Notes: generated by a model not told the origin, from the letters alone. A DNA stretch of 38,136 nucleotides from Fonticula alba ATCC 38817 (GCA_000388065.2 KB932214.1); one strand, 5' to 3'. Shown: positions 28,854 to 34,959, counted from the stretch's first letter. Program-made: numbers and translations.

Positions 28854-31800
28854 TTAAGACTTGAGGAACTTCTTGTTGATCAGGTAGATCATCAGGTTGA
28901 CGTTGATCTTGGCGCTGCCGATCTGCATGGCCTGGATGTTGTCGAACTGCTTCTGCAGCAGGTCCTCGATGGAAATCTCGTGGGTGTCGGTCATGCCGAA
29001 CAGCTTGCCCTCGATCTGGTAGACACCGGACTTCGGGGTGTTGGAGATGGTGAGGTAGGCCTTGCTGCGGGCGTTCTTCGGGACATTCTCCAGCTCATAC
29101 AGGACACCCTTCTGGAAGAGGCGCTCCGCGGTGTAGGAGTAGGAGATGGTGCTGTCGTTCTGGTCCTTCTTGGAGTCGCGGAACAGGCCGAGCCCCTTCT
29201 TCTTGGGGGGCTTGGCCTTGTCCACCATGCCACTGATGGTGGAGTCCACGTACTCCTGGTACTTGGACTTCTGCTCATCCAGGTAGGAGGTCTTCTCGTC
29301 GAGGTTCTCCAGGGTCTGACGAACCTTGACCAGCTCCGAGCGGCGCTGGATGCGGCGGCGGTTCTTGTTGCGAATCTCCTTGGCAATGTCATTCAGGAGC
29401 TCCTGGTAGCCATTGGCACGGGACACCATGCCGGCGGCCTCCAGCTGCTCGAGGTTGCTCTGGACGCGCTGCTTCAGCTGCTCGAGGTTCTGCGGCTGCA
29501 GGGGCTCGGCGGCGGCGGCGGCCGCCGCCGCCGCGGCATCCTCATCCTTCTTGTGCCCGGCGCGGCTCTCGCGGTTCAGGCGGATGTTCTCCTCGGACTG
29601 GAGCTGGGCCTCGTAGAGGGCCTGCTGCTCGGCGGTCACCGGCGACTCGATGATGGCCATCAGGGTCTTGCCACGCTGCACACGCATGACAGACAGGCAC
29701 ATGCGCTTGGTCTCGACGAACATCTGCCGCATGCGCTGGGCATCCTCCGACTCCAAATCCGGGAACCGATTGGTCAGGTTCAGAGTGACATCCTGATCGC
29801 GGCTCTGGTTGTCCACCGTGGCCGGGGGCTGGCCCAGCTCATCGAGGATGACATTCAGATGGTCCGACGCCTCGGGGGCCAGGTCCTCGCGGAACTCCAG
29901 CAGCAGCGAGTGCGTGGTGTAGATCTGCACCGTGGACATGTAGACAATCGGCTTCTGGATGGTCAGCAGATCGTCATACCGGTCCACCTGGAAGTACTCC
30001 TCCACGGTGACCACATTGCCCACCTCGCGGAAGAAGTTGAAGAACCGGTCGGTCGACTGGCGGACAAACTCATTGAGCGACGACAGGTAGAACAGCTCGT
30101 CCTCGAAGAGCTTGCCGACACTGATCTGCATCAGCATCTTGGAAATCTCACCGAGGTTCTTGCGCTCCTCCTGGCGCACGCGGCCGGACTCGACCACGCC
30201 GAAGAAGTCCGGCGACACGATGGCCGGGTTGATGTACCGGTAGTAGATCAAATGACCGACCACCTTGAGGATCTCATGCTCCTCGCCCGGGCCGAGCTTC
30301 TCCGACATGAGACGGTGCAGCTCGCGCGCGATGTACCGAATGCCATACGGCATGTGCGGCAGGGACTCCATGATGGCGGTGATGAACTTGTCGGTCATCG
30401 ACCGCAGGTCCTTGACACGGCGAACGAAGATCTTCATGACCTCATCGCTGTCGAGGGCCTGCGACCGGCTGATGTCATACTGCAGGGTGGACACCTGACC
30501 GGTGCGGGACTCCTCATCCTTGATGAGAGTCCGGTAGATGGTCAGCGGGTCGACATCCAGGTCGAGCTCCTGGTTGTCCAGGATCTCCGACACCAGGGGC
30601 TTCAGCAGGCCATGAAGGAACTGCTGCTCCTTGGCACCACGCGTGTACCGGACAATGAGGTTGATGAAAACCGGATTGTCACGCAGCAGCTCCTGGGCCG
30701 AGCTGACATGGGTGATTTCCTCGGTGAGGGCATCACGGAAGAGCGACAGCAGCAGATACTCCTCGCGGGCATTGTGCGCATAGCTGTACAGGGTGAGGAC
30801 CACCTGCTCCAGGAACTTCTGGTTCTGCTCGCGGCTCTTGAGCGCCGACATGAGCTTGGCCAGGTAGTGGGGCTTGGTCTGGAGCAGGTAGAACAGATGC
30901 TGGTAGGACATGAGCTTGTCGCGGGACTCGCGATCCAGGAGCTTGAGCGAGCCGCCGGTCTCCTGCTGCTGCTCGGACTTCTTCTGCTGCTGGCGCAGGA
31001 ACTTCTTGGTCGACTCGACGAACTCATCCAGCGACACGCGGTTGCGAATGAGCAGCGCAATCTTGACATCCAACTCGCCAAGCTCGCGCTCCTTGGTCTG
31101 GTTCTCGCGAATCTGCAGGACAACCTGCTGCTTGTGGCGCTCCAGCTCGATCTCCTCGTCGAAGTCCTTCTCCGAGTCGTCCAGCAAATGCACAAACCGC
31201 TGGATGGTCTCGAAGGAGGTGTTCTCCTTGGCCATGAGGGCCTTGTACTGCTGCTGGGCGATCTTCCGGCGGAAGTGCGCCTGGATCTTGATGATCTCCT
31301 TCTCATGCTCGCGGTAGTGGCGCATGCGCTCGGCATGGTGCGCGCGCACGGCATTCCCCCGGATCATGGCCTGGATGCGCTCCCAGAAGGGCTCATGCTC
31401 GCGCAGGAGGGCCATGCGCTCCAGGTGGTCACGGCGACCGAGGAACCCACGGATGTTGGCCTGGAGGATCTCGATCTGCGGCTCGTTCTTGGCGAAGTGC
31501 GCCGCGCGGGCCTGGTCTTCCAGGAGCTTGCGCTGCTCATTGAGCGCATGCTCGCGGTTGTCCTTGGCCTGGCGGAAGATGGCCAGGAGCTGCTCCAAAT
31601 CCGACAGGGCCTTGCCAATGGGCGGGGTGTACTGGTACTCGTCGTGCAGCAGCTGGTACTCGGTGCGCAGGGCATCGGCCTGGCGCTCGAAGTCCGCCAG
31701 CTGGGTGTCCCGGTCCTTGGCCAGGTCGGCCAGGAGCTGGTTGACGGCGGCCAAGTCGGCCGGGAAGTCGCGGCTGTCGTCGGCGCTCTTGGCGGCGCGG

Positions 31801-33813
31801 ACCTGACCGGCCACCTCGTCGAAGTGCGCCTCGTAGGTCTTGCACTTGAGGGCGCGCTCGCGATCGTCGAAGGCCGAATGCACCGACGCGGCGATCTTCC
31901 GCGCATCCTCCACGCCCATGCTGGCCGGCGGGGTGTAGCCATGGTCATTGGCCAGGCCCGTGGCATCGGTGGCCAGGGCATCGACCAGACCGCCGAGGTG
32001 CTTGTCGGCCTCCGCGCGACGGGTCTGCACCTCGGTCACCATGGTGGCCAGCTCCTGGCTGGAGTTGGGGAACTCCCGGCGCGAAGCCTCGGCAATGTAG
32101 TCATTGGCATGCTGGTTGAGGGCCGAGAAGTCGTCGACATAGGCCTCCCGACGGAGGGCATAGTCCTTGGCCACGGCCAGAGCCGCGCCATAGGTCTGAT
32201 CGGCCTCATCCAGCCGGGCCCAGCCGGCATCGAGGCTGGCATCGGTGGCCGGCTCCGGGGGGACATACCCGTGCTCGGCGCCGAAGGCCGCATTCTCGGC
32301 CTTCAGCTGGCCCAGCAGCGCCTGCTTGGTGGGCTTCTCCGCGGTGGAGTAGGTCTGGAAGTCATCCAGCAGCGACTGCACCCGGACCGAGTTCATGGTC
32401 TGCAGGGCCGTCGGAGCCGGGGGCTGGTGCGCGGCGGTCTTGGCCGCCATCCAGTCCTGCAGGCCCTCGGCCTCGGCATCATGACGCAGGCGCTTCTGGT
32501 TGTAGGTGAGGGCCGCGTCGAAGTCGTCCATGGCCGCCACGAGGACCTCCCAGGCGGACTCCAGCGCCGCCGGGGACACCTTCTCATCGACCTCGTACTC
32601 GCCCATGTCGTTGTCGGCCATGCGCTTGGCGATGTCCTGGTAGGCGGTCAGCACGCGCTGCTTGGCATCCCGGCGGGGGGGCAGCTCGGTGGTCTTGAAG
32701 GCGTCGAACCCGGACACCAGGCCGGACAGGTCGTCGGCCACGATGTCATCGGTCGGCATGTTGTCGCGGAAGTTGCTGGACGAGGTGTTGCACCACTCGA
32801 TCAGATCGCTGATGCGCGACTCGAAGTCCGCCTGCTTCTCGCGGATCTCCCGGCGAGCCGAGTCATCGATGCCCAGCTCGCGGTTCAGCGAGTTGCCGAT
32901 GTCCCCGAAGGCCGGCAGCTGCAGGTCGCCCAGGTTCTTGGACGCCTGGGCCAGCTCCTCGTCGGTGAAGGTGAGCGTGCCCATGAGGTCGCCGATGCGC
33001 GGGGCCAGGCCCTTGGCAAAGAGGAAGTGACTGTGTCGCGCGCGCCGGTGGGATTGCAGGGGCGAGGGGGAGGGGGGGGAAAGACAGGGTCAGCGGAGGA
33101 GGGAGGCTGGGGGTGGCCAACTGCGGCGGGCGGCGGGCGGCGGGCGGCGGGGAGAAACACATTCGGTGGCGGGCCCCCCCCACACACACACATATGCGGC
33201 GCGACACTTACCTGAGGGCATGGATCATGTAGATGACCTTCGGCATGTTCTTCTTGTCGTAGAGATCGGTCAGCTCGAAGAAGTAGATGACCGGCAGGCC
33301 GACCTTCAGCGAGGCGACGCGATAGGCGTTGAAGTTGTCCGAGTGGCGCAGACCCAGGGGAAGCTTCTGCTTCTCGTCGAAGATCTTGCGCACGTCCTCC
33401 GGCGAGAAGAAACGCGCCAGCTTGGCCAGGAACACACCATTACGCAGGGCGTCCTCCATCTCGATGACGGGGGGCAGCTCCTCCTGGATGCAGACCTCAA
33501 TCCAACTGCCGGGGGGGGGCGGGGGCGGGGGGAGAAGAAGGCACATGCGCGTGTCAGTGTATGTGGTAGTGCGTCACCGGCGGGCGGGAGAGGGAGGGAG
33601 AGGGCGGCGGGCGGGAGGGGGAGGGAGAGGGCGGCGGCGGCGGCGGCAGCCGGGCCCGTGCGCATGCAGATGTGCCCCAGGAGGGGGGCGGCAGAAGACA
33701 AGCACGTACGCCTTGGCCTCACCAATACGGACGAGGTACTCGTGCGCAATGCGCCGAGTGCGCTCCTCGTCCATGGTGTTGGCGTCCGCGCGGATGGGGA
33801 CGGGGTCCTCCAT
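28854..33813 (-). CDS. IQGAP: IQGAP (CH, repeat rod, 3 IQ, RasGAP-related domain, RasGAP_C); complement(join(28854..33030,33212..33505,33710..33813)), 1524 aa
   Basis: MDEERTRRIAHEYLVRIGEAKAWIE...LRNGVFLAKL...LRHSDN...DLYDKKNMPKVIYMIHALSHFL (CH). IQ motifs LQANIRGFLGR, IQAMIRGNAVR and IQAHFRRKIAQ at about 31478-31245. REEYLLL and YYRYINPAIV (GRD). C-terminal INVNLMIYLINKKF. Two introns keep frame (4575 nt). Confidence 0.95.
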
Positions 33814-34959
33814 GATTAGAGCTCAAAGCAGCCGAGGCTGAGTGAGAAGGAGGGGCCTGTGTCAGGCCTGGGCGTTGGGGGAGGGCGGGCGAGAGGGGAG
33901 AAGCGACGACGCGGGGGGGGGGGACAACCGAGGGTCAGTACGCGGCGCGCAGAGGGGGAGGAAGGGAGAGGAGGGCAAGGGAGAGAGGAAGGGAGGAAGG
34001 GAGGCTGCGGACACGAACAATGAGGGGGGTCTCCGGGGGGTGGAGGGGACGGTTGGAAAACCGGGAGTGGGGGGGGGGGAAGGCGCGCGCGGGGGAGAGG
34101 TGGGTGGGGGCGCGCGGGGTGATGTCGAACTTGCGCTCAATGTCACCGGACGCAGTGTAGGGTGGAGAGGGGGTATGTGGGTGTGTATGTAAAAAGGAGA
34201 GAAATGCGGTAGCCTCTGCGGGAGCAATGGCACAGCGATGCCCAAGGTGCGGTAGCCGCGGCACAACGCCGGGCTGTCTCTTGACTCCCCGCCACACCCC
34301 CCCCCCCTGCCACCACCGCCACACCCCCCCCCCCTGGTGGGGGCTGCGCCGGCGTGCTGCGCGCACCGGGCGCATGCACCGCACACACACACACACACGC
34401 GCTGACCGTGCGCGCCGGGGGGACCGGCACCCGGCCAGGGGCGGGCGCAAGGGGGCGGAGCTGGCCGGCGGGGGCGGGGACCGTGGGCGGGGGGCGAGGC
34501 TGGTATGTGCCGCCCCCTCCCCCCTGGAGAAGGGGGCGCGCACGAGCGCCAGGAGCGGGGGACGGGGGGGGGGGGAGGTCAACACGGCGGCCGGACGCCC
34601 CTCCACGGCCTTCTCCCGGGGCCGGGCGGGTGCAGACCGGGCAAACGACGGCCGCCGTGTGCAACCCCTCCCCGGTCGCGGCCCCCGCGCGCGGCTCTCG
34701 GGCGGCTGGCCAAGACGCGCCGCCTGTGTGCGACGCAGGCCCCGAGCAGCACCGGGAGGGCCTACGCCCGAAGACACACGCACACACACACACACACACA
34801 CACACCGGGGCCGGCCGGCCGCGGGGGGAGAGCACGTTCGCACGGGGGAGAGGTGTCTCCGGGCCGCCGGCGCCCTCCCCCCCCCCCCCCCCCCGCCGGG
34901 CGGAGAGGGGGAGTCGCGCTAGCCGGCGCGGCTGGGCGCGCGGCCGAGGTCAGTAGGGC

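What the first reader, a model, noticed from the sequence alone, without database searches (positions are those of the whole stretch)
31539..32837. IQGAP whose CH-to-IQ segment looks like four alpha-actinin-type spectrin repeats
Seen: four units of about 102-115 aa (approx. 32831-32487, 32486-32154, 32153-31848, 31847-31539) with a recurring turn (GYVPP, GYTPP, QYTPP). Units 1 and 2 carry spectrin-repeat Trp positions: FESRISDLIEWC...LESAWEVL, and LQDWM...FQTYSTAEKPTK...GWARLDEADQTY. These match recalled alpha-actinin repeat 1 (LASDLLEWI...FRDYRRxHKPPK...GWQHLEQAEKGY). Known: animal IQGAPs have IQGAP-specific repeats and a WW domain here; the four-repeat actinin rod dimerises antiparallel; Dictyostelium IQGAPs recruit separate cortexillin bundlers. 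Inference: a domain-shuffled IQGAP-actinin chimera, possibly a GTPase- and calmodulin-regulated actin crosslinker with a built-in spacer. I know of no description of this architecture.
Basis: partly seen in the sequence, partly recalled or inferred. Interest (0 to 1): 0.8.

Follow-up and report, generated by a model that had tools for sequence, protein, structure and literature searches.

The report
IQGAP with a spectrin-repeat rod
The IQGAP cytoskeleton scaffold of the slime-mould-like protist Fonticula alba carries a real rod of four spectrin repeats between its actin-binding head and its calmodulin-binding motifs. I found this rod in only four related IQGAP genes and in no paper, and what it does is still inferred.

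Summary
The window comes from Fonticula alba. The gene is H696_05779: 1524 aa, minus strand, three exons, and both introns are confirmed by transcript contigs.

Residues about 191-644 (window 32858-31497) form four homologous units of 102-117 aa.
- The four unit profiles match each other (hhalign E 1e-10 to 1e-14).
- The rod-family profile hits alpha-actinin rods (E 6e-20).
- An AlphaFold2 model (pLDDT 95) shows nine long helices forming four three-helix bundles. It superposes on solved spectrin repeats (Z up to 16.5; rmsd 2.3 A over 210 residues).

This is an IQGAP with alpha-actinin-like repeats, but it is not a transplanted SR1-SR4 actinin rod. Each of the four units matches actinin SR1 best, the repeat next to the actin-binding domain. 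That points to one captured repeat type that was then duplicated.

Only three other genes share the rod, all from environmental or unidentified assemblies; one has three repeats. With Fonticula they form one clade (SH-aLRT 99). About 118 other IQGAPs lack the repeats, including Parvularia, chytrids, animals and yeasts.

Function is inferred: a stiff spacer of roughly 20-25 nm, possibly a dimerising one, that takes the place of the animal IR or fungal MTA/CykF module. Dimerisation and crosslinking are untested. I rate it a new variant of a known kind, of moderate interest.

The parts
33710..33813 (-). Coding exon 1 (ATG at 33813); start of the CH domain
   Evidence: Gene model rebuilt. It equals the database protein P0001, H696_05779. 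The splice joint 33710|33505 is seen in transcript contigs of 4 runs.
33212..33505 (-). Coding exon 2; core of the CH (calponin homology) domain
   Evidence: Joints 33505|33710 (204 nt skipped) and 33030|33212 (181 nt skipped), both GT..AG on the minus strand. The CH region is 50-64% identical to other IQGAP CH domains.
28854..33030 (-). Coding exon 3 (includes the stop): end of CH, linker, spectrin rod, IQ motifs, coiled coil, GRD, RGCT
   Evidence: Continuous ORF. A transcript contig covers 30900-33030 with no differences.
32859..32993 (-). CH-proximal linker (residues about 146-190) conserved among the rod-bearing IQGAPs
   Evidence: This stretch aligns closely between P0001 and P0002 in BLASTP. 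Coordinates.
32487..32858 (-).
   Evidence: Profile A2 against PDB: alpha-actinin SR1, E 8.7e-18. AF2 helices 2-33, 42-83 and 97 onward.
32154..32486 (-). Spectrin repeat R2 (residues 315-425)
   Evidence: Profile A3 against PDB: first repeat of Dictyostelium and human alpha-actinin, E 3.6e-10. The AF2 helix runs continuously from C1 into A2.
31848..32153 (-). Spectrin repeat R3 (residues 426-527); both tryptophans lost; absent from the three-repeat relative P0121
   Evidence: Profile A4 against PDB: 1hci residues 12-118 (SR1), E 3.5e-13. Alignment A1. Trp counts.
31497..31847 (-). Spectrin repeat R4 (residues 528-644); both tryptophans lost
   Evidence: Pfam Spectrin best stretch 334-432 of the 433-aa segment. 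Profile A5 against PDB: first repeats of actinin and plectin, E 2e-9 to 1e-8. AF2 helices 317-361, 370-409 and 419-455.
31224..31481 (-). IQ motif region (residues about 650-735; three IQ-like motifs)
   Evidence: Pfam IQ E 1.9e-5, 24.5 bits, above the cut-off. Motif positions 655 and 685, plus an IIKIQAHFRRK motif read from the sequence.
30120..30743 (-). GAP-related domain (RasGAP, residues 896-1103)
   Evidence: Pfam PF00616, E 3.3e-60, 204 bits.
29079..29486 (-). RasGAP C-terminal (RGCT) domain (residues 1315-1450)
   Evidence: Pfam PF03836, E 6.9e-35, 120.6 bits.

Best explanation
The gene is the Fonticula alba IQGAP orthologue. Its variable module between the CH actin-binding head and the IQ motifs is a rod of four contiguous spectrin repeats. 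Shown: the repeats are homologous to each other and to the repeat that directly follows the actin-binding domain in alpha-actinin, beta-spectrin and plakins (the SR1 type). They are predicted to form four three-helix bundles joined by continuous helices. The gene is transcribed and spliced. The rod occurs in one small clade of IQGAPs, with three or four repeats. Inferred: one SR1-type repeat was captured from a spectrin-superfamily gene in the stem of the Fonticula lineage and amplified in tandem. The resulting stiff, acidic rod would be about 20-25 nm long, judged from the roughly 24 nm four-repeat actinin rod (established knowledge, not measured here). It would hold the CH head at a fixed distance from the IQ/GRD/RGCT signalling core. 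That would give an IQGAP oligomer a defined reach for bundling or tethering actin filaments. It would fill the role played by the unrelated IR (animals), MTA (budding yeast) and CykF (fission yeast) modules.
For: Identity and expression. IQGAP domains. Repeat homology: (hhalign E 1e-10 to 1e-14). Spectrin membership: Pfam. A HMMER scan of 1.8 billion representatives returned only spectrin-repeat proteins and one IQGAP. Family profile against PDB: alpha-actinin 6e-20, beta-spectrin 2.4e-12, plectin 1.5e-8. SR1 type for every unit. Fold: AF2 pLDDT 95.4, pTM 0.68, 9 long helices. Foldseek against PDB: top hits are the alpha-actinin-2 rod, E 2e-7 over about 480 columns. AFDB Swiss-Prot: the top 30 are all actinin or spectrin rods and include no IQGAP. 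VIA-align: Z 16.5, rmsd 2.3 A over 210 residues to alpha-spectrin R16-17. Lineage restriction. One clade on the rod-free C-terminal 880 aa: SH-aLRT 99. Variable repeat number. The CH-to-IQ modules of other IQGAPs are mutually unrelated: Wang et al. 2023, PMC10809011. Animal IQGAP1 acts as an actin-bundling dimer according to the review PMC13299636.
Against: No experiment or multimer model bears on stiffness, oligomeric state or actin bundling. The Fonticula rod alone is below Pfam's gathering score. R3 and R4 have lost the signature tryptophans. The high-confidence model used an alignment that includes true spectrin-repeat proteins, which pulls it towards that fold; the single-sequence model had pLDDT 45. 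The single-repeat tree is poorly resolved, so capture once followed by tandem duplication is the parsimonious reading, not a demonstrated one. All four repeats are acidic, with no obvious charge complementarity that would argue for a specific dimer.
Confidence: 0.7

Rival explanations
1. Alpha-actinin-like antiparallel dimer. Two rods pair antiparallel (R1 with R4, R2 with R3), placing a CH head at each end. The IQ-bound calmodulin or light chain of one subunit then sits next to the CH head and neck of the other, as the calmodulin-like domain does in alpha-actinin. The result would be a Ca2+- and GTPase-gated crosslinker with a spacing of about 25 nm.
For: The nearest relatives in sequence and fold are alpha-actinin rods, and the alignment starts at the junction between the actin-binding domain and the rod. 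The domain order CH, four repeats, calmodulin-binding site parallels ABD, four repeats, calmodulin-like domain. Actinins with one or two repeats exist in PDB (Entamoeba entries), so a three-repeat variant need not break the scheme.
Against: All four units are of SR1 type, so the SR1:SR4 and SR2:SR3 complementarity of actinin is not inherited. All repeats are acidic, with no complementary charge pattern. The head is a single IQGAP-type CH domain, not a CH1-CH2 tandem. No multimer prediction could be run. IQGAPs have other self-association regions (my knowledge of the animal IQGAP1 literature, not tested here).
Confidence: 0.2
2. Docking platform rather than spacer. The rod mainly recruits partner proteins or targets the protein to the cortex or division site, as the MTA, CykF and IR modules do in yeasts and animals. 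Its length would be incidental.
For: [quoted passage not shown] Spectrin repeats commonly serve as protein-binding surfaces; for example, the actinin rod binds FATZ-1 in PDB 7a8t.
Against: No partner is known. Rod sequence conservation among the four relatives is low (19-33% identity to Fonticula), and one relative lacks a whole repeat. This fits a structural spacer better than a conserved docking surface. The two roles are not mutually exclusive.
Confidence: 0.25
3. Not a spectrin rod at all: a generic coiled coil, a diverged form of the standard IQGAP IR repeats, or a gene-model or assembly chimera.
For: The Fonticula segment alone scores below Pfam's Spectrin cut-off, and the single-sequence AF2 model was poor.
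Against: Profile hits to actinin, spectrin and plectin at E 1e-8 to 6e-20. Z 13-16.5 to solved spectrin repeats. No similarity to the IR region. One uninterrupted transcript contig joins CH, rod and downstream sequence in four runs. Independent orthologues have the same layout.
Confidence: 0.02

Closest known systems
Animal IQGAP1/2/3 (CH - IR repeats - WW - IQ - GRD - RGCT)
   Same: Orthologous CH, IQ, GRD and RGCT domains in the same order. A long helical module sits between CH and IQ.
   Different: The module here is four spectrin repeats. It has no profile similarity to the IR region (hhalign probability below 1%), and Pfam finds no WW domain. No IQGAP appears among the top 30 structural matches in Swiss-Prot AFDB.
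Fungal IQGAPs Iqg1 (MTA module) and Rng2 (CykF module), and chytrid, aphelid and Parvularia IQGAPs
   Same: Same family and same holomycotan branch of the IQGAP tree. The CH-to-IQ segment is the variable slot (PMC10809011).
   Different: Chytrid, blastoclad and Parvularia proteins have only about 100-180 aa between CH and the first IQ motif, and no Spectrin match. MTA and CykF are unrelated to spectrin repeats according to the paper and to my scans.
Alpha-actinin (CH1-CH2 ABD - SR1-SR4 - calmodulin-like EF hands)
   Same: Nearest solved relatives of the rod by sequence (E 6e-20) and by fold. Four repeats of about 110 aa joined by continuous helices. The rod starts directly after an actin-binding CH module and is followed by a calmodulin-related element.
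   Different: The head is a single IQGAP-type CH domain. All four repeats are SR1-like rather than SR1 to SR4. There are no EF hands; IQ motifs stand in their place. The antiparallel dimer is untested.
Beta-spectrin and spectraplakin/plakin N-terminal repeats; environmental proteins P0122 (CH-Spectrin-EF-GAS2) and P0123 (array of SR1-type repeats)
   Same: They carry the same SR1-type repeat after the actin-binding domain, with the W...R-[DN]-F-P...E-x-P-P-K signature. P0122 is the best non-IQGAP hit (E 2.6e-22). P0123 shows that tandem amplification of this repeat type happens elsewhere.
   Different: None of these carries IQ, RasGAP or RGCT domains.
Dictyostelium DGAP1/GAPA-Rac1-cortexillin complexes
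   Same: They combine an IQGAP GRD/RGCT core with an elongated actin-bundling element (review PMC13299636).
   Different: There the bundler is a separate coiled-coil protein with a CH1-CH2 head, and the IQGAPs lack a CH domain. Here the CH head and the rod are part of the IQGAP polypeptide.

Membership tests
IQGAP family | N-terminal single calponin-homology domain of IQGAP type | tested here: met
   P0001 carries PF00307 in the precomputed Pfam list, and residues 1-200 are 50-64% identical to many IQGAP CH regions.
IQGAP family | IQ motifs followed by a RasGAP-related domain and RasGAP_C (RGCT) | tested here: met
   IQ 24.5 bits, RasGAP 204 bits, RasGAP_C 120.6 bits, all above their cut-offs. 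The protein falls inside the IQGAP tree.
IQGAP family | IR repeats and WW domain (animal subfamily only) | tested here: not met
   No WW hit. hhalign of the rod against the bird IR region gives probability below 1%. This is not a universal IQGAP feature (PMC10809011).
Spectrin repeat (PF00435) | Match to the Pfam Spectrin model at the gathering score | tested here: inconclusive
   The Fonticula rod scores 25.7 bits against a cut-off of 29.9, E 1.7e-5. The orthologue P0002 scores 44.3 bits with 4 stretches and P0121 scores 27.8 bits. The family profile hits solved spectrin repeats at E down to 6e-20.
Spectrin repeat (PF00435) | Left-handed three-helix bundle of about 106 aa, with helix C continuing into helix A of the next repeat | tested here: met
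   The AF2 model (pLDDT 95.4) has 9 long helices forming 4 bundles. VIA-align gives Z 16.5, rmsd 2.3 A over 210 of 213 residues to alpha-spectrin R16-17, and rmsd 4.4 A over 306 residues to three repeats. This is a predicted structure, not a solved one.
Spectrin repeat (PF00435) | Conserved tryptophans in helix A and helix C | tested here: inconclusive
   Present in R1 and R2 of Fonticula and in all four repeats of P0002. Absent from Fonticula R3 and R4.
Alpha-actinin | Tandem CH1-CH2 actin-binding domain | tested here: not met
   There is only one CH domain, orthologous to IQGAP CH domains.
Alpha-actinin | Rod of four distinct repeats SR1, SR2, SR3, SR4 in order | tested here: not met
   Each of R1-R4 matches the SR1 stretch best (1hci about 12-127; 4d1e 264-379).
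Alpha-actinin | C-terminal calmodulin-like EF-hand domain | tested here: not met
   No EF-hand family in the Pfam scan of the whole protein. IQ motifs follow the rod.
Alpha-actinin | Antiparallel homodimer through the rod | not testable with these tools
   No multimer prediction or biophysics was available. The net charges of the repeats give no indication either way.

The most novel reading that the evidence does not exclude
The protein is a functional analogue of alpha-actinin built on an IQGAP chassis. The SR1-type rods would pair antiparallel, so that calmodulin or a light chain bound to the IQ motifs of one chain regulates the CH head of the other, with a Rho-family GTPase bound to the GRD as a second input. 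That would make it a single-polypeptide, doubly gated actin crosslinker with fixed spacing. It would have arisen by convergence in the lineage of an aggregative protist.
Probability: 0.15. Interest if true: 0.7.

Novelty: new variant of a known kind. Interest (0 to 1): 0.5.

Why it matters
IQGAPs link Rho-family GTPase and calmodulin signals to actin in cytokinesis and motility. The segment between the actin-binding head and the IQ motifs is their least understood and most variable part. In this lineage that slot is filled by a well-understood structural module of defined length and stiffness. This gives a natural experiment on what the slot needs: a spacer, a dimeriser or a docking site. It is also a clear case of domain shuffling between the spectrin superfamily and a GTPase scaffold, in a close relative of fungi. 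Finally, it shows that the SR1-type repeat can be amplified on its own into a rod. The effect on current views is modest, because spectrin repeats are known to be mobile modules and the function here is not tested.

Tried and rejected
- **Single-sequence AF2 of residues 150-660.** pLDDT was 45, so the model was unusable for fold search. It was replaced by a model built from a 15-row alignment.
- **Word-based homologue searches with the rod.** They found only the protein itself, or one partial relative. The exhaustive HMMER scan was needed.
- **Metagenome contig scans.** The scan with the Fonticula-first alignment found nothing. The repeat with P0002 first found only the contig of P0127.
- **Tree of single repeats, to decide whether R1-R4 are positional orthologues and monophyletic.** With only 115 columns most deep branches are unsupported. 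The direction of the three- versus four-repeat change is unresolved: Fa_R3 groups with the R4 units at 96/89 but sits on a long branch.
- **Idea that the animal IR, ichthyosporean or dikaryan CH-to-IQ regions are diverged spectrin repeats.** Profile comparisons give no support, nor does Pfam.
- **Charge complementarity as a hint of an antiparallel dimer.** All repeats are acidic, so this is uninformative.
- **Earlier notes of this scan.** Nothing relevant turned up near this place or under the words spectrin, actinin, IQGAP or calponin.
- **Literature.** No paper combines Fonticula with IQGAP. None of the top-listed papers holding both IQGAP and spectrin repeat has the two terms in its title or abstract. 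The one I read (PMC9145010) mentions IQGAP only as a scaffold protein in its conclusions and reference list.
Full report
**What is there**

The window has about 70% G+C. Positions 28854-32984 on the minus strand hold a 1376-codon ORF. Reading upstream, I found two GT..AG introns and an ATG at 33813. The joined reading frame has a single stop, at its end.

The product is identical to a database protein, P0001, named 'hypothetical protein H696_05779 [Fonticula alba]', 1524 aa.

Transcript contigs from four public runs (two samples) lie on 30900-33867. They show exactly the two joints I modelled: 33030|33212 and 33505|33710. There are no differences across the rod. The gene is therefore expressed, the model is right, and the CH head, the rod and the rest sit on one mRNA.

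**Domains**

Pfam finds RasGAP (204 bits), RasGAP_C (120.6 bits) and IQ (24.5 bits) in exon 3. The N-terminus is a CH domain 50-64% identical to those of more than 100 IQGAPs. There is no WW domain. The protein is an IQGAP orthologue.

**Checking the observation**

- Its weak best hits among PDB sequences are all alpha-actinin repeats.
- An exhaustive HMMER scan of 1.8 billion representative proteins with residues 195-640 gave only six hits. One was another IQGAP, P0121 (E 1e-34). The other five were spectrin-repeat proteins, led by P0122, a CH-Spectrin-EF-GAS2 spectraplakin-like protein (E 2.6e-22).
- An orthologue from a JGI metagenome, P0002 (41% identical overall, collinear), has a cleaner rod. 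It scores 44.3 bits on Pfam Spectrin with four stretches.

I aligned the rods of P0001, P0002, P0121 and the partial P0127. The resulting profile hits:

| Target | E-value |
|---|---|
| chicken alpha-actinin | 6e-20 |
| human alpha-actinin-2 rod, 1HCI | 1.8e-16 |
| beta-spectrin | 2.4e-12 |
| plectin | 1.5e-8 |

The alignment to 1HCI is collinear, profile 5-333 to chain 8-354. The alignments begin right at the junction between the actin-binding domain and the rod.

Profiles of the four separate units match each other over their full length (hhalign probability 97-98%, E 6e-11 to 8e-15).

**Fold**

A single-sequence AF2 model was poor (pLDDT 45). With a 15-row alignment of the four IQGAP rods plus the HMMER-detected relatives, the model has mean pLDDT 95.4 and pTM 0.68. 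It consists of nine long helices. This is the pattern of four three-helix bundles in which helix C of one repeat continues into helix A of the next.

- Foldseek against PDB puts the alpha-actinin-2 rod first (7a8t and 1hci, E 2e-7 to 4e-7, about 480 aligned columns). The top 35 matches are all spectrin-repeat or spectrin-like (plakin) repeat proteins.
- Against AlphaFold Swiss-Prot the top 30 are all alpha-actinin rods (about 268-750), the first four beta-spectrin repeats, or alpha-spectrin (TM 0.67 by query). No IQGAP appears, although human and yeast IQGAPs are reviewed Swiss-Prot entries as far as I know (my knowledge, not checked here).
- VIA-align gives Z 16.5 with rmsd 2.3 A over 210 of 213 residues to alpha-spectrin R16-17. 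It gives rmsd 4.4 A over 306 residues to three repeats, and 427-436 residues aligned to the actinin rod.

One caveat applies. The alignment includes true spectrin-repeat proteins, so the model leans towards that fold. Those rows were recruited by significant sequence similarity, however.

**What kind of repeats**

I searched PDB with each unit's own profile. In every case the best-scoring stretch is the first repeat after the actin-binding domain:

| Unit | Best hits |
|---|---|
| R1 | 1sjj 250-366 (8.7e-18); 1hci 14-127 |
| R2 | first repeat of Dictyostelium actinin (3.6e-10); 1hci 16-119 |
| R3 | 1hci 12-118 (3.5e-13) |
| R4 | first repeat of Dictyostelium actinin (2e-9); first plectin repeat; 1hci 13-127 |

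Beta-spectrin is always hit at its first repeat, residues 301-416.

So the rod is not a transplanted SR1-SR2-SR3-SR4 actinin rod. It is four copies of the SR1 type, which carries the signature W...R-[DN]-F-P...E-x-P-P-K. P0002 shows this signature in all four repeats.

The same repeat type is amplified in tandem in an unrelated environmental protein, P0123. The parsimonious reading is capture of one SR1-type repeat followed by tandem duplication. A tree of single repeats (115 columns) is too weak to prove it.

**Distribution**

- Among 120 CH-bearing IQGAPs retrieved through the CH domain, none has PF00435 in its precomputed Pfam list.
- Only P0001 and P0002 match HMMs of the four units at E of 1 or less.
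- Chytrid, blastoclad and Parvularia proteins have only about 100-180 residues between CH and the first IQ motif.
- Direct Pfam scans of ten representative CH-to-IQ regions find Spectrin only in P0002.
- Profile-profile comparison of the rod with the bird IR region and with the ichthyosporean, dikaryan and kickxellalean regions gives probabilities below 1%.

The four rod-bearing genes are:
1. Fonticula.
2. The P0002/P0130 cluster, seen on intron-less contigs of about 4.7 kb in two JGI samples.
3. P0127 on contig L004. This contig also encodes the CH domain, R1 and R2, with an intron inside R2.
4. P0121, on a 22-kb eukaryotic contig from run SRR1955887, with a CH exon upstream.

On the C-terminal 880 residues, which exclude the rod, the four form one clade (SH-aLRT 99). 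This clade is sister to the remaining holomycotan IQGAPs, which include Parvularia.

P0121 has three repeats; it lacks the counterpart of R3. Repeat number has therefore changed within the clade.

**Function (inferred)**

Wang et al. 2023 (PMC10809011) state that the segment after the CH domain differs between lineages: MTA in Iqg1, CykF in Rng2, IR in animals. [quoted passage not shown] The Fonticula clade fills this slot with a spectrin rod.

The most defensible mechanism is a stiff spacer of about 20-25 nm between the actin-binding head and the IQ/GRD/RGCT core. The length is judged from the actinin rod, from my own knowledge. Such a spacer would set the reach of an IQGAP oligomer on actin filaments. 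Animal IQGAP1 is reported to act as a filament-bundling dimer (review PMC13299636).

Whether the rod itself dimerises antiparallel like alpha-actinin is open. That would place the IQ-bound calmodulin of one chain beside the CH head of the other. The repeats are all SR1-like and all acidic (net charge -7 to -12 in Fonticula), so nothing in the sequence argues for or against a specific interface. I could not run a multimer prediction. A docking role is also possible and does not exclude the spacer role.

**Novelty and verdict**

I found no description of an IQGAP with spectrin repeats. The only examples in very large protein collections are these four related genes.

Spectrin repeats are known to be mobile modules and no function has been tested. 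I therefore rate this a new variant of a known kind, of moderate interest.

Noticed in passing
window 30681-30683 (minus strand; P0001 residue R916, in the stretch LLRDNP): P0001, P0002 and many other holomycotan IQGAPs (Parvularia, an aphelid, some chytrids, Kickxellales) have Arg at a GRD motif position. Bird IQGAP1/2 have Thr there (IVTGNP), Corallochytrium has Thr and Chromosphaera has Ser. P0121 and P0127 also show Arg in the same motif in the sequences printed. From memory this is the arginine-finger-equivalent position, whose loss makes animal IQGAPs non-catalytic. If so, this protein might be a true GAP. The alignment was by motif only.
   Followed up: partly
L001 6001-9753 (P0121), with a CH exon at L001 5432-5737: A relative from an unidentified eukaryotic assembly (run SRR1955887, about 60% G+C) has the same architecture but only three repeats; it lacks the counterpart of Fonticula R3. 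In the weak repeat tree Fonticula R3 groups with the R4 units, so R3 could be either a loss in P0121 or a recent duplicate of R4 in Fonticula.
   Followed up: partly
window 31539-32153 (repeats R3 and R4): Fonticula R3 and R4 have lost both signature tryptophans, while the metagenomic orthologue P0002 keeps two in every repeat. The Fonticula rod is also the most acidic (pI 4.2-4.9). The rod is evolving fast in Fonticula (19-33% identity to its relatives) compared with the GRD/RGCT part (56% identity to P0121).
   Followed up: partly
P0123 (ENA, 1946 aa) and P0122 (JGI, 1985 aa): P0123 is an environmental protein made almost entirely of nine or more tandem SR1-type repeats. P0122 is a spectraplakin-like protein (CH, Spectrin, EF-hand, GAS2) that reiterates a module of about 240 aa beginning with an SR1-type repeat. 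Both show that this repeat type is prone to tandem amplification in protists.
   Followed up: no
L004 2131-2205: The P0127 gene has a short GT..AG intron inside repeat R2. The Fonticula rod and the P0002/P0130 contigs are uninterrupted there; the P0130 contigs carry a full 1517-aa ORF on about 4.7 kb and look like transcripts.
   Followed up: no
window about 29510-29540 (P0001 residues about 1298-1307): A run of ten alanines sits in the linker between GRD and RGCT. It is absent from P0002. It is probably a G+C-rich low-complexity expansion.
   Followed up: no
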